Positions 5,262 to 18,275 are shown, numbered from the stretch's first letter. The stretch is DNA of 64,000 nt from Caecitellus pseudoparvulus (GCA_965644315.1 CBFFRQ010000030.1:617083-681082), one strand, 5' to 3'. Notes: generated by a model from the letters alone, not told the origin. Made by a program: numbers and translations.

Positions 5262-7502
5262 TCAGTCACTGTCGCTGCTGTCGCTGTCACTGCTGCTGTC
5301 ACTGCTGCTGGACTGGGGGCTCTGCTCGCCTTGAGGCTCGAACGCGTCGTCCAGGGGAATGCGCTCACCCTCACTGGCGGTCAGGGCCGCCACCGGTTCC
5401 ACCTCCTGCAAGTCCCCGGCCCGCTCAGCGGCCAGGATACTAGGCACTTGGGCCAGGCAGCGCTTATAACGGGGCACCAGCGGCGTGAAGGCAGAGCGCT
5501 CCAGCTGCAGCTGAGACACTTTGGCGCTGCCGTCGGGCAGCACCATGTCTGCGCGAAGGGTGTGCATCATGTCCAGGAAGAACTTGCGCTGCTTGGAGAG
5601 CAGGATGGTGTAGGCGGCGCCATCCCGCCCAGCGCGGGCAGCTCGCCCCACACGGTGCACGTACGTCCGGATGCTGCCTGGTGGGTCGTAGGACACGGTG
5701 GCGGCGACGTTGGGCAGGTCCAGCCCGCGTGCAGCAGCGTCTGAGGACACCAGGACGCGCACCTGGCCACTGGCCGCCTGTGCCAGCATGGCTGAGCGCG
5801 CATCCTGCCGCAGGCTGGAGCTGAACTCGGCGACAGTGCAGGTGGCGCGGGCAGGCGTGGCCTGGGAGGGCGGGATGTCGGCCCCCGTGCCGTGCAGCTG
5901 CAGCAGGCGTGTGAGGCGGTGCGTGGCGGTGAGGGAGCCCGTGAACACGAGGACAACGCTGCGGGGGGGTGCCGCTGCCAGTGCTGCCAGGATGAGGTGC
6001 AGTGCCGCCAAGGACTTGTCACGCGCCTTGACGGTGACGAACCGCTCGGTGAGGTTGGCGGGGGTGATGAACTTGCCCCCTGCCGTGCCCTCGTGCAGGG
6101 CAGCCGCCTCGCCGGCGTCGCTGCCTGCCGCCACATCCCGCACAGTGGTGAAGTGGGTGGGCCTGTGCAGGGCCAGGGCTGCCATGTGCTGGGGGTTGTT
6201 GGTGAGTGTGGCCGACACCAGCACCCGGCGGAGGGGGTGGGCCAGGGCAGCAGGGGGAAGACAGGCAGGGCTGGACGTGCCTGGCAGCGCCAAAGCAGCC
6301 AAGGCAAAGTTATGGGCGACGAGGCTGCTGTTGGAGCCCGCCCCCGCGCCCAGCATGCCTGATGAGACCAGGGTGCCGGGGATGGCGCTGCCCACTGCTG
6401 GGCGGTGCTCCGTCCACACAGCCTCATACACGCGGCGAATCCAGTGGTTGTACGACTGTGCCAGCAGACGGTCTGCCTCGTCCACCACCATCCACTGCAG
6501 CGCCGCCAGGCTGAACCCTGGCGTGCGGTCCAGGTGATCCACCAGGCGCCCGGGCGTGGCCACCACGACATCCACCGGACCCGACACCGCCGCCGCCTCC
6601 ACAGCCAAGGAGGTGTGCCCCGTCACCAGCTCTACCCGCAGACCCAGGGCGCCACCCAGGGCTGCAGCGATGCCGTGCACTTGCGCGGCAAGTTCTCGCG
6701 TCGGCAGCAACACCAGACCCCGCAGACCCCGCCCGCCCTGCTCTGCCAGGGCGTGCAGCATGGGAAGCAGGTATGCGAGGGTCTTGCCGCTGCCCGTGGG
6801 AGCGGTGATGGCGACATCTCCAAGGCAGCTGACGTCCCCAGCGGCCGTCGCCGCCACCAGTGCAGGCACGACGTCGCGCTGGACAGGGAACCACCTGTCG
6901 TGCCCCAGCGCTTCCACGGCAGCTATGAGGTCCGACCGCAAACCCCACTCTGCCGCCTCCTTTGCCAGACTGCCTGCCGGGCTCGGGGTCGTGCCAATGG
7001 CCTTCGTGCTCAGCACGGCACGGGTGCCCACTGCAGCGCCTGCACCACTGCCGGCAGCCTCCACTGCCGCCTGGCGCACTGCGCGCCGCCCAGCACTCTC
7101 CTTCGCAGAGGGAGCAAGGGCGCCATCCTGGCGCATGTGCTTGGCAAGGCTGGCCAGCGTGAAGTCTTGCGGGGCTTCAGCGGCACTGGCATGAGCTGTG
7201 GGGCTGCCGATTTCCGCACTGCTCCTCGAGCCGTCACTGGACGCACCAGACCCAGACGAGGAGGACGATCCAGAAGCGCTGGATGCATGGCTAGCGGCAC
7301 TACTATCTGAGTCTGCTCGGGCGCGCTTCGGTGTCGGCGCAGCAGCTCTGGAATGGGGTGCATCGGCTGTTCCGTGCGGGGAGGCTGCGGAACTTGGGCG
7401 TCCACGCTTGCCTCGTGCAAGAGTCGCCTTCAGCTTCGCCACAGCATCTTCTTTCCCCTGCACCGCAGCATCACCAAGTCCGTGCCGTTGAATGCCGAAC
7501 AT
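5262..7502 (-). CDS. DDX51: DEAD-box RNA helicase DDX51/Dbp6 (60S ribosome biogenesis)
   Basis: Q-motif WFPVQ, APTGSGKTLAY, PTRELAAQV, TPGRLVDHL, DEADRLL, SAT, ARGLD, YVHRVGRAARAG. DEADRLLAQSYNHW and SATLTNNP..MAAL.LH.P fit the DDX51 subfamily. First ATG at 7502; the ORF-track start at 7577 is TTG. Confidence 0.85.
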   Translation of the reverse strand: MFGIQRHGLGDAAVQGKEDAVAKLKATLARGKRGRPSSAASPHGTADAPHSRAAAPTPKRARADSDSSAASHASSASGSSSSSGSGASSDGSRSSAEIGSPTAHASAAEAPQDFTLASLAKHMRQDGALAPSAKESAGRRAVRQAAVEAAGSGAGAAVGTRAVLSTKAIGTTPSPAGSLAKEAAEWGLRSDLIAAVEALGHDRWFPVQRDVVPALVAATAAGDVSCLGDVAITAPTGSGKTLAYLLPMLHALAEQGGRGLRGLVLLPTRELAAQVHGIAAALGGALGLRVELVTGHTSLAVEAAAVSGPVDVVVATPGRLVDHLDRTPGFSLAALQWMVVDEADRLLAQSYNHWIRRVYEAVWTEHRPAVGSAIPGTLVSSGMLGAGAGSNSSLVAHNFALAALALPGTSSPACLPPAALAHPLRRVLVSATLTNNPQHMAALALHRPTHFTTVRDVAAGSDAGEAAALHEGTAGGKFITPANLTERFVTVKARDKSLAALHLILAALAAAPPRSVVLVFTGSLTATHRLTRLLQLHGTGADIPPSQATPARATCTVAEFSSSLRQDARSAMLAQAASGQVRVLVSSDAAARGLDLPNVAATVSYDPPGSIRTYVHRVGRAARAGRDGAAYTILLSKQRKFFLDMMHTLRADMVLPDGSAKVSQLQLERSAFTPLVPRYKRCLAQVPSILAAERAGDLQEVEPVAALTASEGERIPLDDAFEPQGEQSPQSSSSDSSSDSDSSDSD

Positions 7503-7976
7503 GACGTTCGAATCCGGTGCGCAATGCCCCTGGGCAAGACTTCCAGTCGACGAAGCTGCAGATTCGAGCTGCTCCAACCCACGCGCAGACCTGCCACACT
7601 TGCAAAGCAGACAGGTGCTTCAAGGTCCTCAGTTTAAATGGTGGTTATTTGAGTATTGGGGAGTGGCCTTCCTTTCATTCCAGTGGCACGAAGCCCCCAT
7701 CCTTGGCCGCTGGCGCGAGGCAAAGATCGTGTCAGAGTCGCCTGGACGCCGAAATGTGAGGGGGGCAGCGGGGGGCACAAGGGCAATCGCCACCACTGCA
7801 CACAATCCAAACACACACCCACAAATGACAAGCTTCCCAACCTTCAAGGACACCTGGTTCACTCTGCCCTACTTCTGTGTGAGTACCCGCATGGCGGTGG
7901 CATGTGCACTGCGGCACTGCACCTCACGCACCACCACGCCGTTTCCCTCTCCAGGCCCAGCAGGCCACGCATTCAG

Positions 7977-10779
7977 ATGGCTGCAGCCTCAGACACGTTC
8001 GGCTCGGCAGTTGACCCTGAATCGGAGGAGGGGTTTGCCTCCAAGACGGCCGTTTCGCCTGAGGAAGGTAAGTTTGTGGTGTGTTGCGGGTCATTCTAAG
8101 AAATGTCTTGGCGCTCTGAGCACTCCGCGCGTCGCATGCACGGGGACGGCCATCGCCGCCTGGACTCGCACACTGGGCGTGTGATGGGAGTATAAGACTA
8201 TGTTCCTGCTCTGTGTCCTGCTTTGCGCTCCGAAGGGCTCCGCTCCGCGCCACCGCGCCCTGTATCGGCCGCGTCGGCGGCGCCTTCCTTCACACACGCA
8301 CGACACACCACCGCACCACGCAGTCGGCGTGGAGCTTGGCGGGACAGCCCTCCCTTACGAACGCAAGCATGACGTGCCTGAACACCTGGAAGCCGAGTTC
8401 GGCATGACCCTGCCTGACCCAAGCCAGCCCCGCACCGAAGACAGCTTCAACACGCTGGGCATCGACATCGTGCGGGACAACAGCAACCGAGTGAACACCA
8501 ACGCCGACCTCGTGCGGGCCGTGAACGACTACGACTACACGGGCTCCTGGGCAGGGCGCACCGTGGGCATCCTAGCCACGGCACTCAGCCTCGGCGGCTA
8601 CTACGCCAGCCAACGCAAAGTGGTGCGTCCGGGGCACTTTGGGCACTACGTCAGCTCAGGCCGCCACATGCTGGTGCCGCCTGGCATCCACTCCCTGGTG
8701 TCCACGACAGACACGTGGGCTGTGCCGTACGAAGTGCCCATGGATGACGAGGACCGTGCCGTGCGCACGTTCGGCAGCAAGACGCTGCTCATCTGCCCAG
8801 AGAACCATGTGGGGGGCGCCTTCCGCATCGGCAAGCACGCCGATGACCGGGAGGATGGCGAGTTTGTGCTCATGCTGCCGGGCCGCCACGTGCTGCCCGA
8901 GGAGAACTACCGCCAGGTGCAGGTGGTGCAGCTTGAAGCGGGGCGTGTGCAGCTGGGCCCCATCACCCTCCTGTGGGTGAAGGAGAACTTCCTTGGTGGC
9001 GCATACCGCCGGGCAACGGGCGTGTACGAGGTGTTCAACCCGGGCGCACCATACTGCCTGCATGCAAAGCACTGGGACGACATTGAAGTCGTGGAGCGCC
9101 GCCTGGACGTGTTCCGCCTGGGCCCCCTCACGTTTGTGACGGTGCTGGAGGGGCAGCTGGCTGGGGCGTTCGAGAAAGGCACAGGGCAGTACCGCATCTT
9201 GCCCCCCGGCCACACGTACCAGCTGCACAACAAGGAGTACGAGGGTCTGCAGGTGGTGGAGCGCGCCGACAACTTCCGCCTGGGGCCCTACTACTTCATC
9301 ACGGTGCAGGATGGCTGGGTGGCTGGCGCGTACGCAAAGAAGACAGGCCGGTGGGTGCCGCTGCCCGCCGGCGCCTCCTACCAGCTCAATGTGGAGGAGT
9401 GGATGGAGCCCAAGATGTCCCGCCGTGACACGCACGTGGTGACGGTGGGCCCCCTCACATACCTGACCACCCGCCCCGACACGCTGTCTGGCGCCTTCCG
9501 TGTCGATGATGGCGCATGGGTGGAGTTCGACGAGGACGGCAAGGAGTACGTCCTGCACAACAAGGAGTACCACTCCGTCACCTCCATCGGCAAGTACTCC
9601 AACAGGCCCCAGACGTTCGGGCCCAACGTCGTCGTGACCATCCCCGACGGCGCGTGGGGCATCATGACCCGCATGGGTACCATGGAGATCAAGAAGCCCG
9701 GGTACTACAAGGTGTCCTCCGAGTACACCGTCCTGCCCTCCATCCCCTCCAACACCTTCACGTCCCAGTTTGACCAGCACCAGTTCAAGAGCAAGGACGG
9801 CATCCTCATGGACGTCACCCTGAACATGGTGTGGCGAGTGAGCGACCCTCAGCTGGTCGCGTTGTTCCCAGGCTCCTTCGAGGAGCTCCGCGCCACCCTG
9901 GGCCGCACAGTCCTCAGCAACCTCGTCAAGCAGTGCATGAGCTACAACCGCGAGCAGCTGCTGCCCACCCAGCAGGACATCATGGCCGGCCGCGGCAGCG
10001 ACTTGGGGGAGGAAGAGCTGGCTGCGCTGGTGGCCGCCGCAGACGACGCCAAGGCGAAGCTGTACAGCAGCATCGAAGGTGTGGTGCTGACAACCCTGCA
10101 GGAGCGCAGCAAGATGGGTTCCTGGGGGCTGGAGATCGTCTCCGTGCTGGTGGAGGGCTTCCGTCTCCTGGACGAAGGCATCATCGCCGACCTCGCCGGC
10201 ATCACCCGCTCCATCATCGCCACAAAGGCGGAGAAGGTGAAGGGGGAGCTGTCCATCGCCCAGGCCGAGGCAGAGAAGGAAGCCAACAAGAAGCGCGCCG
10301 AGGCGTCCGGTGCCGTGCGCATCCAGGAAGCCCAGGCGGCTGCGGAGGTGCAGGAGACGGAGGCACGTGCCTTGGCCAAGGCGCGTGTCGTGGAGGCCAA
10401 GGCTGAGCGTGACATGCAGGTGCTGGAGGCGTCCTCCAAGGCCAAGGCCGATGCGGAGGCCCGCAGTGTGCAGCTGGAGATCTCCACTCGGGAAAAGCGC
10501 GAGAGCGCGCAAGCCGAGGCCGACGCCATCAAGCTGCTGGCGGCTGCCAACCACGAAAAGGCCATGAAGGAAGCGGAGGCTGCCGCCGCCATCCCACCCC
10601 AGCAGGTGCAGCTGGAGCAGGCTCGCTATGCCGTGGAGGCCCTGGAGAAGCTCGGCGCGGCTGCGTGGCGTCACCCGGAGCCCATGATGGAGGCGCTGGA
10701 CCAGCTGAAGCCTTTCCTGCGCCTGGGCAGCACTTCCCTTGCAGACCTGCCTGCCACTCGAGGCAGCGCGGGGCACTGA
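7977..10779 (+). CDS. SPFH/Band 7 protein with about seven tandem N-terminal beta-repeats and an Ala/Glu coiled coil (vacuolin/flotillin-like); exons 7977-8067 and 8324-10779
   Basis: Intron 8068-8323 (GTAAGT..CAG) joins MAAASDTF...PEE to VGVELGG in frame. SPFH core: SKDGILMDVTLNMVWRVSDP...WGLEIVSVLVEG. C-terminal AEAE/AQAE heptads. Repeats of about 55 aa matching [FL]xxVxEGxxxGA[FY]xxxxGxxxxLxPGxxY...LGPxT. Confidence 0.85.
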
Positions 10780-11135
10780 GCTGTGACACGCTGCACCCAT
10801 GCTGTGGGCGCTGGCGCAAGCTTTTGTACATCGAGAGCCTGTGCCGAGTGGGTCCGCGCCAATGGGCAGCGCTTGCCACAACCGGTTGACCTGCACGTGC
10901 AGAGAAATGCACACCCGTGCGTGAGCTGAGCGCCACATTGCCGCACATTTTCCACACACCACAGGACTCAAACCCGTGCAGCTGTCATCCACGTATGCAG
11001 CGCTACCTGCTTCGTGTTGGCTTCTGGGCGGCGTTGGAGGAACAACACCCTGCGCGCACGTGCAGCGGCCGCTTTGTCCGCAAGCGCAACCAAGCGTAGC
11101 TCCGGGGCAGTACGCCCCGCAACACACATTTTCGA

Positions 11136-14100
11136 ATGGAAAAGCCTTATGTGGCGTTGGAAACGAACAGTCCCTTGTTGGGACACGCAGGCCTGGGGCA
11201 GCGGCTGGCACAAGGCGGGCACATGTCGGTCCCTGCTTCGGCGGTGCAAGCCAGCTCTCTGGCGAAGCCGGGACAACCATCCCCTGGCTGCTGCGAGTGT
11301 TGGACGAGCCCTCGCTGCAGGTGTGGCGTGCCGTACCTGTGCTGGTACCATGTGCGCGGGGCCCACCCCCATTGCAAAACATGCTGCTGCGTGTGGCCCG
11401 TCACGCTGCCCGTCATCCTGGACATGGTGCAGTGAGTGGCATCGACCGCCTCGCGCAGCCAGCGTTTTGGCAGCGTTTTCCCTCGGCACACGCCCCCTTG
11501 CAGAGACCGCGTGCGAAGTCGCATGCTGACCCTGAACGTATTCATGTTGGCAGTTGCCATTGTGTTTGTTCTCGTCGCGGCCCCCTGGATGACTGATCCG
11601 TACAACAGCCTGACCTTGGCCGCAGAGCCTGCCTCCGTGAGCTTCGCAGTGGAGCTGCAGGATTCCATGGTTTCAGGGGCGCAACTAGACACGCCTGTCG
11701 TCGTTCAGGTGCGAACATCCGCAGGAGCCCCTGTCGCGGGCGTCCCCGTCAAGTTGTTCCTGCGCCCCCGGAAGCACACTGGCCTCAGACTGTGGAGTGG
11801 CGAGCGCCTGGCCATTGTCCCTGGGTCGGCGCTCGACAACAACCTCGCCACGCTGGACAGCGTGGAATTGACAGGAACACTCATCCAACACTCGAATGAG
11901 GCCGGATTTGCGAGGTTTGATGATATCGTGCTGCGCGGGGCCCCAGGCGACGTCACGTTCTCTGCTGGCCTCGTGAACCAGCCGGCAGCAGTCGTGGCCG
12001 ATGCCCAGCCTCTGTCCACACAGCTGCAAAACCGCATCGCCAACATGTCCACACAATTTGACGCTGACGCCCTGCTCCAAGCAGGCGCAGTCCTGGGTCG
12101 TGCCTTGCCTGTCATGCCTGTCGTATCAGTGGTGAACGTCGACGGGCAACCTGCTGTGGGCACACACTGCTTCATCGGGTACTTGCCGCACTCAGAGCCT
12201 GGCGCACCACAGTTCCGAGCACCCGTCTTCCTGACGGGGAACCGAAGCACGACAGCGAACGCCACAGGCTTCGTCACGTGGCCTGAGCTGGCTGTGGCAG
12301 GGGCTGGGCAGAGTGCCCTGCGCCTCTTCGTGCAGTGTGGCGGCCAGTTTCAGCCCCTGCTCCCCGGCTCACTGGCGGTGCGCAGTGCATCAGTGGCGAG
12401 TATTGAGCTCGTCAGTGCGGCGCAAGCTGCTGTGCCCGAACTTGCGCCGCTCCCTGGAGCCCCTGCCGTGCGGGTGCCGGACAGCGCGGGCCAGCCTGTT
12501 CCGGGCGCTGTGCTTGTCGCGTCCATCCGCTCCGAGCTGTCATTGACCTGGACAGACACTGCACCAGACTGTGTGCTTTGCACTGCTCCAGGGGCCCATC
12601 GCTTGATGAAGAGCGTACAGCAGGCCGCTTCCCAACCGTCGGATTCAGATGGCATCGCCAGGTGGCCTGGTCTGTCCTTCCCCAGCCAAGGCCTTGCCGG
12701 ACAGTACTCACTGCGACTGTCAACTCTGAACACAGCAGGCAAGTCACTTCACGTCGCACTGGGGCCCATCAACGTGACTTCCAGCGTGGCAGATGTGTCG
12801 CTGCTTCCAGGCACTGCCACCGTCGTCTCTGCCCGACTGGCTGCTTCGTGTGTGCAGCCTGCCTGCGCAAATGGCGAAGTCAGCAACAGCCCGGTCTTCC
12901 TCTTGACTGATTCAAGCGGTGCGCCTGTCGAGGGGAAAGTCCTCGCACCGTTTGTTGTGGACAGCTACATGGCTCTCGCACCAGCCTCAGCGGCCCAGCC
13001 GCCCGTTGTTGTGACCGGGCAGGGAAACCCCAGCGACGAAAATGGGCACTTTTCCTTCGACATCGAACCCCTAACCATCAAGGTCTCGGGGAATGGAACC
13101 CACACCATTGGCTTCCGGGAGGTGGCGAGTGGATTCGGAGGGCACGAGTGGCCTTTCTTGGCCAGCTTGCCACCGATGACCAGCGCCAGTGCCAACTTCC
13201 CGACCCAGATGGTCACCGTGACGAACCTGCTACCTGCACATGATGACCGCTGCGCGCATGTTCAGGCCGAGGAAAGTGTCCTACACGCCTCTGTTGGAGG
13301 CACGCTGGCCGACCGCCTTCAGGTTCGAGTTGTGAATGGCTGGGGGTCGCCTGTGTCAGGCGTGCCGCTCCTTGCCACCATGCACAAGCCTGCTGGTGCC
13401 GCGTGGAAGGCCCCCGTCGCAAACACAACCTCTGCAAGCGGGGAGGCAAGCCTTGGCGGGGGGGCTGTCATCTATGCCCCCGGAAGTGCCACGGTGCTCT
13501 CCGTTGCTGCAGCAGGATCGCCAAGTTGCTCCAGCGGAGTGCTGGCGCTGCACATAGCCAGCGACGTGGAGCGAGTCACCGTCCAGTCGCCATCTGCCGC
13601 AAGCGGGGACTTGGGGTCGCGCGCCAACCCACTCCCGTGTGTGACCGGGCAAGCCTTGAACGAGACGTTGGAAGTGTTCGCCCAAACCTCCACAGGGAGC
13701 GCCGTGACCTCTGCCGTGCTGGGGCGAGTGGCCTTGTCTGCCTGGCCAGGATACCTGGACGTGCTTCCTGGGTACTCCACTGCCTCTGGGCAGACCATCT
13801 GTGATGTTCAGTCCGGGTACGGAGCTCTCGGCGCCCAGTGGTGCTCCTCTGACCAATCAGGCTTTTTCCTTTCTGCCGGAACCAACGTGGAGGTGGGCAG
13901 CCCGAGTGGTGGGGTAGTTTCCTGGAGCGGAGTGACCGTGACACGGGGCCAGCCTGGACTGTACGCCCTGCTCTTGGAAGTGAACGGTGTGCAAGCCGAC
14001 AAGCCAGTGTGGACTTGGTGCCCGTCCGAGCTTGGCAGCATTCGCTTGGCGCAGAGCATGGACGAGAGGACGGCGGCAGACCCAATCGTCATCGGCAACA

Positions 14101-17100
14101 AGGTGGATGGCATGCGAGGCGCTGTGGTATCCCTAGTGGATGTAAACGGGGATCCGCTGCAGGGATACTCTGCGTGGGGCGCCGTCGACAGTCGCCGATC
14201 TGGGCACCCTGCTCCATTTGGTTATTTTCTGAGCCAGGGTGTGTTTTCCCTGCAGCGTGCAGTGGGAACAGTCGCAGGAAGGGGGACCCTCCCGGCAGCT
14301 CCTTACAACGGCTTCGTGTTCTCGGAAGCAAGCAACTCTGCGGGGAATGTCACCTTTGGTCTCCTCCGAGTCGTGAGTGGCGATCCCTGTGCAATTGTGG
14401 CTGAGCCCAGTCCGACTTGCGACGGTTTTGGGGAGCTCTTTATGTTGTTCACCTTCCCAACACCCGGGCAAGAGGGCACCGGGACCGCTGCGACTGGATC
14501 GCTGTCTGCCAGGTCCGCAAGGTACTTCACAGTCGCCCAAACTCTGGAGCCACAGCACGTGTTCAACCCTGTGCAGGCAGTTGCCTTGCGTGTGCTGCCC
14601 AGCTCCGTCACGGCTAGTGGGGCGACCTTTGCGGCGCAGCCCATGGCACAGATCGAAATGCGGCTGCCGTTTGCTCTCCCATCAAGCACTAATGACTCGG
14701 CACTTGCAGTGTTCAGCCCACAGGACATTGCAGTTGTGCCGTTCCTGGACCCTGCCGGTTCAAGCGACGCCGCTTCTGGGCCACTGCCCACGCTGGAATA
14801 CTCCAGCCTCATCCTAACGAACGCGACGTCAGAGGCAACTCGCTTGGTAACGGGGTCTTCCTCATTCTCAACAGGGAGCGTCGCTGGAGCCGGAGGGCTT
14901 GCTCCCTTCCAAGGCCTACGCATCACCGCTGCCTCCACCCTTCTCGGCAGCTCCGCGAGTAGTTCCAGCTTGGGCAAGTACCCCATCCGCTTCACTGCAC
15001 TGGGCGTGGCCAGCAAGGCTGCCAATGTCGAGCTCGTGGGCACCCCAGATGTGCTGGCCATCGTACAGCAGCCCCCCGAAGTAGTGTACATTGGGCAGCC
15101 CTGGACAGGGACTGTCGTAGTTCGAGCCGAGCTGCGGAACGGAGTTGCCGTTCCTGGCGTCGCGCTGCGAGCGGAGATTGCCTCCATGGTCACAGACGGT
15201 GCGGCTGCAAACGCAGAGCTGACTGCACTCGCCAGGGAGGCAGGTGGCATCACACCAGTGCTGCGCACCCAAGCGGGGCAAGACATGACGGGATCGGACG
15301 GGACACTGGCTCTGCAGCTCGAACTGCGACAGGCCCTGCCTGGGACGTACACTTTTCAATTCTCGTCCAATAATGGCTTGACGTCGCAGGCCACGAGCAA
15401 GGTGCGCGTGCGCTCCCCCGTGCAGGCCATCTCGGCGAGCGTCGATGGCATGACCCTGTTTTTGCGTGCTGGCAACGCCTTGGACCCGGCTCCCAGGGTG
15501 ACTGTGACCTTGCAACAGTCCGGAGGTATGGACCCTGCCAGTACCAGCACACTCACTAGTTGGTCTGATGACAGGGATACCGCAGCAGAGGACCGCTCGG
15601 TCGACTTCTCAGACGTGTCACTGGAGGGCATGCAGGTACTGCCCATCGTGCTCCCTCTGTTTGAATTGCAAGAAGGTGCTGCCCGCCCATCCATCATTCG
15701 TGGAGCCGCGTTTACGGATGCGAACGGCACGGCCACGTTGGCGTCTATGCGCATCATAGGAGGCGTGTCAGGATCGTACCAGCTTGCGTTTTTGGCAGGC
15801 GGACAGGTGCACCAGCCTGCCAACGCTGCCACAGTGCAGTACAACAACCCCAGCGATGTGGGCATTCAAGCACGGACTTTGGAAGACCTGTCCACGGTAG
15901 TTGGAGTCATGATCTTCTTTCTCATGCCCTTGCTATGCGGCAACAGCATCTACTGCGCCAAGGGCTGTGTGTGCTGCATGGTGCCGTACATGACAATACT
16001 GTGGATACTTTGCATCGCGTACGCCTCTTCCATTGCAACAGCTGGGGTTGGTGTCAAACTGCAATACGCCGACCCTTTCATCTCTCTCCTCGTGACCAGC
16101 GTTGTTGTGCTTGCGACGCTGGCCTGGTGCTCGGTCTGTGGCGTGTTTGGCAAGGCGCTGGCTGACGCTAAGCACCAGGACTCATCCATCATTCAAGCCG
16201 TGGTGGAGCGGTTAGGTGGGCCCAGCGGCCCGGTGGGTCGCGCGCTCCAGGCCATGGGGTGTCTTGCGCCCCGTGTCCGCATTGCGGCACGGCACCGAGC
16301 GGCACTTGCAGTGCTGCAAGCCAAGTTGGACCGAGTTGAGTCTTCTGCCGACGACATGACCGTCGCCCCCTCCCAGTTGGGCTGGACGATGAAGCACTTG
16401 CCCTCCTCCCGGCCGAAGGTGCATGCAAAAGACGCCAGTGGGGACGTCGAGCTGGTCGATCGCAGCCAAGGCAGCCTGGTTGCTGCCGCACCAGCCGCGG
16501 CACCCACAGCCGCCCCTCCATCTCCACGGCATGCCCACGCTGTTGATCTCGGTGGCTCTTCATTCCAAGAGCTTCCCTATGATCCTTGGGGCGTGCCCCG
16601 TGACACGAAGTTTGGCATCCCCATGATTCCATTGGAGGCCCTGGCCCAACTGGCGCCGTACAAGCCGCTGTACACTCGCAAGCTCATCGCATACACGCTC
16701 CTTGTCAAGCGCCTGCTGCCTGTTGGCGTCTCGGTGTTCGAAGCAAATGTGGAAGCGCTGCGCATATTCAGGGAGGATGTGCTGCGCGTGTCCGGCGAGT
16801 CGACGGCCGCTGGCGACCTGTCAGCCTCCGGGGCTGCCAGCCCCAGCCCGCTGAAGCAGCGGCATACGCGGGTGCAAGTCGCTGGGGCACTGGCCGCAGA
16901 TCGACGGCAACAAGCGCCAGCGCTGAAGCCGATCAAGTCCAGGCGCTTCTTTGATGCAGTGCAAGACCGCTTAAAGCAGTTGATGCAGCCGACAACAGCC
17001 GTCACAGGGCACGCGCTGTACGAAAAGCCGGACGACGCCTTCTTGCCGCTGCGACTGGTGCTGGCATGTGGTCTGAGTATACAGGCAGTGTGGATTCTTT

Positions 17101-18275
17101 GTATGCTGTCAGCGTGGGTCATCCGCACGAGTTTGTTTGCTGTGGATATTGGGTACAGGAGGGCAGTGCGTGAGAAGGAGGCGTTGCAGGTGTCTGCCAT
17201 TGGACGAGCTGTGGCATCCGGCCAGGTGGAGGCGAACCTAAGGACATTTGCAGCACTGGCCGAGCTAGGTTCAGGAGGAGGCAGCACTGAATCTGAGTGG
17301 CTCATCCAAGCCGCTGAGCTTGCCGGCGTTGCAATGTCGTTGCTGAACTCAGTGGTCGCGCTTGACTTGGAGCTGTTGCGGGACTGGCTGAAGACAACGA
17401 TAGCGGTGGGAGGCTACGTTGGGCTGGCAGCTGCCTTATGTGGGTCATTGGCGTTGTGGTACTTCATGCTCAAGACGTACCGGCAACGAATCTTCGAAAT
17501 GCGGCAAGGCGTGTACAGCCAGTTGGACAAGTCCAAGGGCGGCGTCTCAGGCGCGACGAGGTACATCCCCTTGCAGCTGTGGCACACGATATTCTCGTTC
17601 CTGGCCTGTCTGTTCTGCGTTGGCATCGTCATCGCGGCATTGGTGACGCTCTTCTATAGCGATGCGTTCCTGTTCAATGCGTTGGGCCTGCCAAACCTCA
17701 TTCTGACACTGGCAGGCGGTACGTTGGTCACGTTTGTCCTTCGCTATGTCTTCTTGAAGTGCTACGTCACACGCGGCAGAACCATCCGACACCGGCGGTG
17801 GTTCAACTACTGTGACCTCCTCAGTCTGATCACGGACCTCGTGACAGGCCTGCTACCCATTCTGACCCGCTTCCTCACCACTTTGGGCTTGAGCCTGCTG
17901 GCCTTTGGCCGCACAGACACGCCCCAACTTCCCCGGCAGCTTGCATTCATGGACCCTTCGTTCACTGCTTACGTTGGCATGCAGACGGTAGACCACATGC
18001 ACAACAACCCCATCGTCATGGTCCTCACCGAGCTGCTGTGGATGGACGTGCAGTGGAAGCGACAACGCCAACGGCAACACGACACGCCCACCCCTGAGCA
18101 AGCACGCAGGGCCGCCGTCCTGGTGCGAGCCAAGGCCAAGGTGTGGCTGGCAGTCACCCTGCACAACAACCCGCAGCTCATCTCCCTGCGCTTGGCGCGC
18201 AGGCAAGGCCGGCCGGAGAGCAACCTGTACAACATGTTGCAGGGCCCTCTGCTCACCTCCGCCGCCCTTGGTTGA
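11136..18275 (+). CDS. Giant STRA6-family (RBP-receptor-like) multipass membrane protein with a large Ig-like repeat ectodomain; exons 11136-11431 and 11504-18275
   Basis: Intron 11432-11503 (GTGAGT..CAG, 72 nt) joins the Cys-rich ORF at 11136 to DRVRSRMLTLNVF. The C-terminal part matches STRA6 as I recall it: FLPLRLVLA, LKTYRQRIFEMRQG, HRRWF...GRTD..QLP....MDPSFTAY.GM..VDHMHNNP, RAKAKVWLAVTLHNNPQLISLR. Repeated [TS]DxxGxAx[FLW] motifs lie at about 11640-15860. Confidence 0.82.

What the first reader, a model, noticed from the sequence alone, without database searches (positions are those of the whole stretch)
11136..18275. STRA6-family transporter domain fused to a ~1,400-aa array of invasin-type Ig repeats in a unicellular eukaryote
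Seen in sequence: a Cys-rich N-terminus and TM anchor, then a long beta-rich region with at least eight copies of [TS][DN]xxGxAx[FLW]-like motifs (SNEAGFARF, ANATGFVTW, SDSDGIARW, SDENGHFSF, TSASGEASL, SNSAGNVTF, TGSDGTLAL, TDANGTATL). Each follows a 'V.V....G.PV.G' strand. A multipass region follows. Established knowledge: that motif pair typifies bacterial Big_1 (invasin/intimin) Ig domains, and 17035-18200 follows animal STRA6 motif by motif, including the calmodulin-binding tail (RAKAKVWLAVTLHNNPQL). Animal STRA6 has no such ectodomain and captures a soluble retinol-binding protein. Inference: this is a receptor-transporter carrying its own adhesion or capture stalk, perhaps for Ca/calmodulin-regulated uptake of lipophilic molecules (sterol, carotenoid, retinoid) from prey or surfaces. 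It could bear on the pre-animal origin of STRA6.
Basis: partly seen in the sequence, partly recalled or inferred. Interest (0 to 1): 0.8.

Follow-up and report, generated by a model that had tools for sequence, protein, structure and literature searches.

The report
Ancient stalked form of STRA6 receptor
This gene is a real, spliced relative of our vitamin A uptake receptor STRA6 with about ten immunoglobulin-like domains inside one outer loop, and because distant protist groups share that layout, STRA6 is probably a trimmed descendant of a very old eukaryotic membrane protein of unknown cargo.

Summary
Confirmed, with corrections. One gene (exon 11136-11431, RNA-supported intron, exon 11504-18275; 2,355 aa) encodes a STRA6-family membrane module (Pfam E 3e-17; a non-animal profile hits zebrafish STRA6 at E 2e-29; fold Z 16.9). 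It carries about ten Ig-like domains; the four that were folded match intimin/invasin domains best (Z about 10).

It is not a one-off fusion. The same layout, with a collinear array, occurs in Thecamonas, Pelomyxa, Anaeramoeba, euglenozoans and Cantina. Short amoebozoan forms keep the anchor helix but lack the array. The anchor maps best, with modest statistics, to STRA6 TM2. The array is therefore probably an insert in the TM2-TM3 loop, later lost in several lineages; the tree does not prove that direction.

A retinoid role is unlikely: the lid loop differs, and no carotenoid oxygenase, lipocalin or LRAT was found in the genome. Most likely mechanism (about 40%): calmodulin-regulated exchange of a non-retinoid lipophile, with the stalk as tether. 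No paper describing this form was found, and the scan had no earlier STRA6 note in this genome.

The parts
11136..11431 (+). Exon 1: cytosolic Cys-rich N-terminus (98 codons plus 2 nt), ending in the first half of the conserved PVxLDxxxDRVRSR motif
   Evidence: Translation; RNA contig covers 11312-11431 and splices; motif shared with homologues. The start codon itself is not covered by RNA.
11432..11503 (+). 72-nt phase-2 GT..AG intron
   Evidence: RNA joint 11431-11504 in run X16; same position and phase in the P0001 gene, L002
11504..11591 (+). Second half of the juxtamembrane motif and the anchor helix, probably equivalent to STRA6 TM2
   Evidence: Hydropathy; the HMM of this segment hits short amoebozoan forms; best placement on the animal-type alignment is the TM2 segment
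11610..13232 (+). Ig-like domains D1-D4 (folded here)
   Evidence: AF2 model mostly beta, mean pLDDT 75.8 with D4 weaker; intimin D0/D1 Z 10.3, invasin Z 9.5; Big_1 clusters in the Atlas
13233..15857 (+). Ig-like domains D5-D10 (not folded; borders approximate)
   Evidence: Repeat HMM; collinear alignment and position-specific HMMs
15876..16163 (+). Three membrane helices, corresponding to STRA6 TM3-TM5
   Evidence: Hydropathy; conserved P..GNS motif; short protist forms align to animal-type proteins from this helix onward
16164..17021 (+). Long, poorly conserved cytosolic loop (region of STRA6 CaMBP0)
   Evidence: Low conservation with P0001 apart from a YDPWGVPRD block; topology inferred
17028..17471 (+). 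TM6, extended helical-hairpin lid (about 80 aa; about 30 in zebrafish), TM7
   Evidence: Alignment to 5SY1; AF2 helices
17565..18030 (+). TM8, TM9, intramembrane helix and the conserved RxD / D.xF.xY / HNNP motifs; Pfam RBP_receptor core
   Evidence: Pfam E 3e-17, 63 bits, cut-off 25; alignment A2; 5SY1 Z 16.9
18111..18200 (+). CaMBP2-like basic amphipathic helix; anchor Trp displaced by +1
   Evidence: Family profile hits the CaMBP2 peptide 5K8Q at E 6.5e-5; Trp survey
11504..18275 (+). Exon 2: the whole coding frame to the stop

Best explanation
A full STRA6-fold membrane protein (TM2-TM9, intramembrane helix, calmodulin-type tail; no TM1) whose first outer loop holds a rod of about ten Ig-like domains. 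It belongs to an old, widespread protist subfamily. SHOWN: gene structure, transcription, folds, shared architecture. INFERRED by analogy with STRA6: it dimerises, binds Ca2+-calmodulin through the tail, and lets a hydrophobic small molecule pass between an outer cleft and the bilayer without ATP. The cargo is probably not retinol. The loop-anchored Ig rod probably tethers the donor (prey or particle surface, or an opposing membrane) in place of the soluble carrier that vertebrates use. Confidence is about 0.9 for architecture and family, and about 0.4 for this mechanism.
For: Pfam RBP_receptor; 27 of 30 aligned relatives match it; a non-animal profile hits 5SY1 at E 2e-29 and 5K8Q at E 6.5e-5; Foldseek's only hit at E<=0.001 and VIA Z 16.9 (next 6.4) are STRA6. 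Ig fold. The window-only repeat HMM hits 24 of 31 relatives with at least 1,200 upstream residues (E<1e-3), controls at most 6.2 bits. An HMM built from 22 other ectodomain-plus-TM3-5 segments covers the window protein end to end at E 1e-103. Named carriers span Apusozoa, Amoebozoa, Metamonada, Euglenozoa and Stramenopiles. A canonical calmodulin gene is in the genome. STRA6 mechanism: PMC5133064, PMC12714816.
Against: No functional data exist for any non-animal member. The RBP-binding lid is not conserved and the tail's anchor Trp is shifted. A shared fold does not show shared transport. Localisation (plasma membrane or endomembrane) is unknown. The anchor = TM2 mapping is top-ranked but weak (0.5 against -2.8; global hhalign probability 11%), and the direct local test failed. 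The genome has an oxidosqualene-cyclase-like gene, so sterol uptake is not obviously needed.
Confidence: 0.4

Rival explanations
1. A signalling or contact receptor without transport: the Ig rod senses prey, substrate or tension, and the STRA6 core relays this to calmodulin or other cytosolic partners.
For: Long intimin-like rod; large cytosolic loop and tail; the named carriers are phagotrophs (own knowledge); vertebrate STRA6 is also reported to signal (PMC8595884).
Against: The best-conserved residues lie in TM7-TM9 and the intramembrane helix, the part that forms the cleft in STRA6 (own knowledge). The array has been lost several times while the core was kept.
Confidence: 0.25
2. An endomembrane protein (ER, phagosome or other vacuole) whose Ig rod is a luminal spacer or scaffold, as in NOMO or gp210, with the core handling membrane lipid.
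For: No cleavable signal peptide, only a signal anchor; weak CarboxypepD_reg, MG4 and SMCHD1-type Ig matches belong to non-adhesive arrays; fixed array length across supergroups suggests a molecular ruler.
Against: Animal STRA6 is a cell-surface protein; no localisation data; the comparison with NOMO and gp210 is from memory, not tested.
Confidence: 0.25
3. A true retinoid or carotenoid uptake receptor, as in vertebrates.
For: Family membership and conserved core.
Against: No match for RPE65/BCO, Lipocalin_2 or LRAT in the genome while control genomes did match; lid loop differs; members occur in anaerobic protists.
Confidence: 0.06
4. An assembly or annotation artefact: two separate genes.
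For: No single RNA contig spans both halves; run X3 shows three 1-nt deletions.
Against: One stop-free frame; a distinct strain's contig spans 14253-16879 without gaps; 21 of 29 listed differences fall at third codon positions; the X3 deletions lie in homopolymer runs; transcriptome-derived full-length homologues exist.
Confidence: 0.02

Closest known systems
Vertebrate STRA6 (PDB 5SY1) and STRA6-like/RBPR2; Pfam PF14752
   Same: TM6-TM9 and intramembrane helix fold, conserved core motifs, CaMBP2-type tail; TM3-TM5 alignable through short protist forms; probable TM2 equivalent.
   Different: No TM1 or extracellular N-terminus; about 1,400-aa Ig array in the first outer loop; longer lid; shifted anchor Trp; no RBP, LRAT or BCO found in the genome.
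Capsaspora owczarzaki CAOG_08692 (UniRef name 'Receptor for retinol uptake STRA6')
   Same: Unicellular STRA6-family member already named in databases.
   Different: 716 aa, animal-type layout with TM1 and no array; groups with the animal-type set (99/92).
Uncharacterised long homologues: Thecamonas AMSG_07193, Pelomyxa Pelo_12283, Anaeramoeba M0812_27979 and M0811_06923, Diplonema DIPPA_11363, Cantina, Papus
   Same: Same architecture, N-terminal motif and largely collinear array.
   Different: Only about 20% identical; annotated as hypothetical proteins; some have larger arrays or loops (up to 4,166 aa).
Intimin/invasin/FdeC Big_1 rods (PF02369), with MG4 and SMCHD1 Ig-like domains
   Same: Domain fold (Z 9.5-10.3; rmsd 2.9 A over 101 residues for one domain) and the strand plus Gly-turn motifs.
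   Different: Below the Pfam cut-off; no sign of the outer-membrane barrel or lectin-like tip; tethered at both ends to a eukaryotic multipass protein.

Membership tests
STRA6/RBP_receptor family (PF14752) | Profile match above the curated cut-off | tested here: met
   63 bits against 25, E 3e-17
STRA6/RBP_receptor family (PF14752) | STRA6 fold of the C-terminal membrane domain | tested here: met
   AF2 pLDDT 84; Foldseek E 1.3e-4; VIA Z 16.9, 311 aligned, rmsd 6.8
STRA6/RBP_receptor family (PF14752) | Nine TM helices with an extracellular N-terminus | tested here: not met
   Eight helices plus the intramembrane helix; no TM1 equivalent; N-terminus inferred cytosolic
STRA6/RBP_receptor family (PF14752) | CaMBP2-like C-terminal helix | tested here: inconclusive
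   The family profile matches 5K8Q, but Trp is at the canonical place in 74 of 91 tails and shifted here
Vertebrate STRA6 proper (RBP receptor) | RBP-binding lid between TM6 and TM7 | tested here: not met
   About 80-aa helical hairpin with no alignment to the about 30-aa zebrafish lid
Vertebrate STRA6 proper (RBP receptor) | Orthology with animal STRA6/STRA6L | tested here: not met
   The window protein lies outside the animal-type plus Capsaspora group (99/92); deep branches unresolved
Vertebrate STRA6 proper (RBP receptor) | Retinol transport, dimerisation, calmodulin binding | not testable with these tools
   Needs biochemistry; genome context argues against retinol
Big_1 (PF02369) invasin/intimin Ig domain | Pfam score above cut-off | tested here: not met
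   23.8 bits against 34.9; best relative 30.9
Big_1 (PF02369) invasin/intimin Ig domain | Ig-like beta-sandwich closest to intimin/invasin | tested here: met
   D1-D4 only: intimin Z 10.3, invasin 9.5; Runt, velvet and C3 MG domains within 1 Z, so tied
Invasin/intimin adhesins | Outer-membrane barrel and adhesive tip domain | tested here: not met
   No such Pfam or NCBIfam match

The most novel reading that the evidence does not exclude
The last eukaryotic common ancestor had a STRA6-fold receptor with a ten-domain Ig stalk inside its TM2-TM3 loop, used by phagotrophs to move lipophilic molecules under calmodulin control. Animal STRA6 and STRA6L arose by deleting the stalk and adding TM1, and later took on a soluble carrier.
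Probability: 0.3. Interest if true: 0.85.

Novelty: new variant of a known kind. Interest (0 to 1): 0.68.

Why it matters
Reviews describe STRA6 as seemingly produced 'from scratch' (PMC3546623) and as a vertebrate protein (PMC5133064, PMC12714816), and STRA6-like proteins were called of unknown function (PMC3184775). A conserved stalked subfamily in five eukaryotic groups moves the fold back to early eukaryotes and predicts a function older than retinol transport. It also makes that function testable in culturable protists. The window gene is one ordinary member; the interest lies in the family it exposes.

Tried and rejected
Single-sequence PDB searches found nothing for either half. Word-index searches returned 1-2 hits and badly under-reported the family, so the exhaustive search was used because novelty rested on absence of relatives. 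Pfam scans of single repeats gave no significant hit. A local profile test of the anchor segment against animal-type proteins was not significant. One alignment script timed out. No paralogue was found in the genome and no synteny with the homologue's downstream neighbour. The rhodopsin search was uninformative because no control genome matched. The STRA6 structure and topology papers were not held, so TM numbering rests partly on own knowledge. Literature searches for STRA6 with Capsaspora or LECA gave 0 papers, and PF14752 gave one rotifer transcriptome paper. The joined, spliced protein was not built or searched; exons were searched separately. Rejected: unique fusion, recent bacterial adhesin capture (not formally tested, but the array is collinear across supergroups), two-gene artefact.

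Full report
OBSERVATION. A stop-free frame runs 11436-18275 on the + strand. All quoted motifs are present and exceed chance: 9 against 0.65 expected for the loose pattern, 4 against 0.06 for the strict one. A marine metatranscriptome contig joins 11431 to 11504, removing a 72-nt GT..AG intron, which gives 2,355 aa by arithmetic. Two independent checks support this splice. The closest homologue's gene has an intron at the same position and phase, and the splice rebuilds a motif, PVxLDxxxDRVRSR, that is contiguous in distant homologues.

ONE GENE. RNA pieces fall in 22 of 30 bins over 10900-16880, but all are short, so a single mRNA is not shown. A distinct strain's contig spans array and membrane part (14253-16879) without gaps, and 21 of 29 listed differences are at third codon positions. 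Three 1-nt deletions in run X3 lie in homopolymer runs and are absent from the other runs; I read them as sequencing errors. The gene is single-copy in a 30.6-Mb genome. The DNA occurs in marine samples. The 18S gene looks bicosoecid to me from memory; this is unverified.

MEMBRANE MODULE. Pfam RBP_receptor matches at E 3e-17. A profile of 30 non-animal-type sequences hits zebrafish STRA6 (5SY1) at E 2e-29 and the CaMBP2 peptide (5K8Q) at E 6.5e-5. The AlphaFold model (pLDDT 84) finds STRA6 as the only Foldseek hit at E<=0.001 and at Z 16.9 against 6.4 for the next chain. Two features differ. The loop between TM6 and TM7, which binds RBP in vertebrates (PMC3546623), is an 80-residue helical hairpin here. 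The tail's anchor Trp, canonical in 74 of 91 tails, is shifted by one residue in this clade and a few others. A canonical calmodulin gene is present; binding is untested.

ARRAY. The first 543 residues fold as four beta-sandwiches (mean pLDDT 75.8, fourth domain weaker). The best solved matches are intimin (Z 10.3; single domain rmsd 2.9 over 101 residues), invasin and FdeC (9.5), with Runt, velvet and macroglobulin domains tied within 1 Z. Atlas neighbours are Big_1, MG4 and SMCHD1-type Ig proteins. Pfam Big_1 stays below cut-off. The domains work structurally like invasin rods but do not pass the Big_1 membership test, and the fold does not imply adhesion. D5-D10 were not folded; about ten domains is an estimate.

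NOT A ONE-OFF FUSION. The exhaustive search found 525 relatives. Of the best 150, 31 have at least 1,200 residues before the module, and 24 of these match a repeat HMM built from the window alone; reversed and shuffled controls reach 6.2 bits at most. Named carriers are Thecamonas trahens, Pelomyxa schiedti, Anaeramoeba (several paralogues), Sulcionema, Lacrimia, Diplonema, Papus and Cantina (supergroup assignments from own knowledge). An HMM from 22 other ectodomain-plus-TM3-5 segments covers the window protein end to end (E 1e-103). Arrays are collinear. D3 and D7 pick their own position in all five lineages left out, D9 likewise, and eight of ten window domains score best with their own position's HMM. 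That test is biased by segmenting on a collinear alignment, but it favours vertical descent of one array.

WHERE THE ARRAY SITS. Short forms from Soliformovum, Cavostelium and Balamuthia begin with the same motif and anchor helix, then pass through a short loop to the next helix. They align with animal-type proteins from that helix onward (E 1e-51). On the animal-type alignment the anchor segment scores best at the P(VL)NFL..SxR plus TM2 segment (0.5 against -2.8 for the next site), and a global alignment puts it there too, although weakly; a local test failed. Helix count and sidedness fit TM2, array, TM3-TM5, TM6-TM9 and the intramembrane helix. I infer that the array is an insert in the TM2-TM3 loop and that TM1 is missing.

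HISTORY. In a 52-sequence tree, Capsaspora and the animal-type proteins group at 99/92. Most amoebozoan short forms lie near them, separated from nearly all long forms by a weak branch (74/96). The long/short label needs 4-5 changes. The tree is unrooted, so direction is not shown. Long forms occur on both sides of the commonly proposed eukaryote root, while named short forms are amorphean, so an ancestral stalk with repeated loss is the simpler reading. The loss leading to animals may predate animals by far. The animal-type rows other than Capsaspora were labelled by sequence, not by name. The window's clade did not group with Cantina; its position is unresolved.

MECHANISM. By analogy with STRA6, which releases retinol into the bilayer without ATP and is bound by calmodulin (PMC5133064, PMC12714816), the most likely role is calmodulin-regulated exchange of a hydrophobic molecule, with the rod tethering the donor (about 0.4). 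Retinoids are unlikely: no carotenoid oxygenase, lipocalin or LRAT matched although control genomes did (absence is not proven). An oxidosqualene-cyclase-like gene weakens a sterol-scavenging need. Contact signalling (0.25) and an endomembrane spacer role (0.25) remain open.

NOVELTY. Membership of the wider STRA6 family is met on profile and fold; membership of vertebrate STRA6 proper is not. Databases already label a Capsaspora protein STRA6, and one long homologue carries the Pfam name, so pre-animal members are implicitly known. I found no paper on the stalked form (most subscription journals are not searched), and reviews treat STRA6 as a late novelty. The scan had no earlier STRA6 note in this genome, and nearby notes concern other genes. 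Verdict: a real, apparently undescribed variant of a known family; interest 0.68.

Noticed in passing
window 8200-10779 (+): 859-aa protein with a Band_7/SPFH domain (E 1.4e-7) behind a long beta-repeat region; directly upstream of the gene.
   Followed up: no
window 5262-7577 (-): DEAD-box helicase, Pfam DEAD plus Helicase_C.
   Followed up: no
P0030, P0074, P0078, P0099, P0137: Proteins in the animal-type group with an apparent signal peptide and a different 300-500-aa N-terminal ectodomain without Pfam match (three scanned): apparently a second, independent ectodomain gain.
   Followed up: partly
P0121: Protein kinase, thioredoxin and cytochrome b561 domains precede a short STRA6 module; possibly fused gene models.
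   Followed up: no
window 12384-12782 and 14028-14567: D3 scores almost as well with the D7 profile (53 against 59 bits), hinting at an ancient internal duplication of the array.
   Followed up: no
P0015, P0020, P0039 and similar: Anaerobic Anaeramoeba species carry several long-form paralogues, whereas this genome has one.
   Followed up: no
L011:880-1700 (G000:C69): Intron-split canonical calmodulin gene.
   Followed up: partly
L008:1447-3558 (-): Oxidosqualene-cyclase-like gene (TIGR03463 718 bits, below cut-off 851; TIGR01787 above cut-off).
   Followed up: partly
G000:C91:18239-19866: A fragmented, divergent eukaryotic SSU rRNA copy, apart from the tandem array on C81.
   Followed up: no
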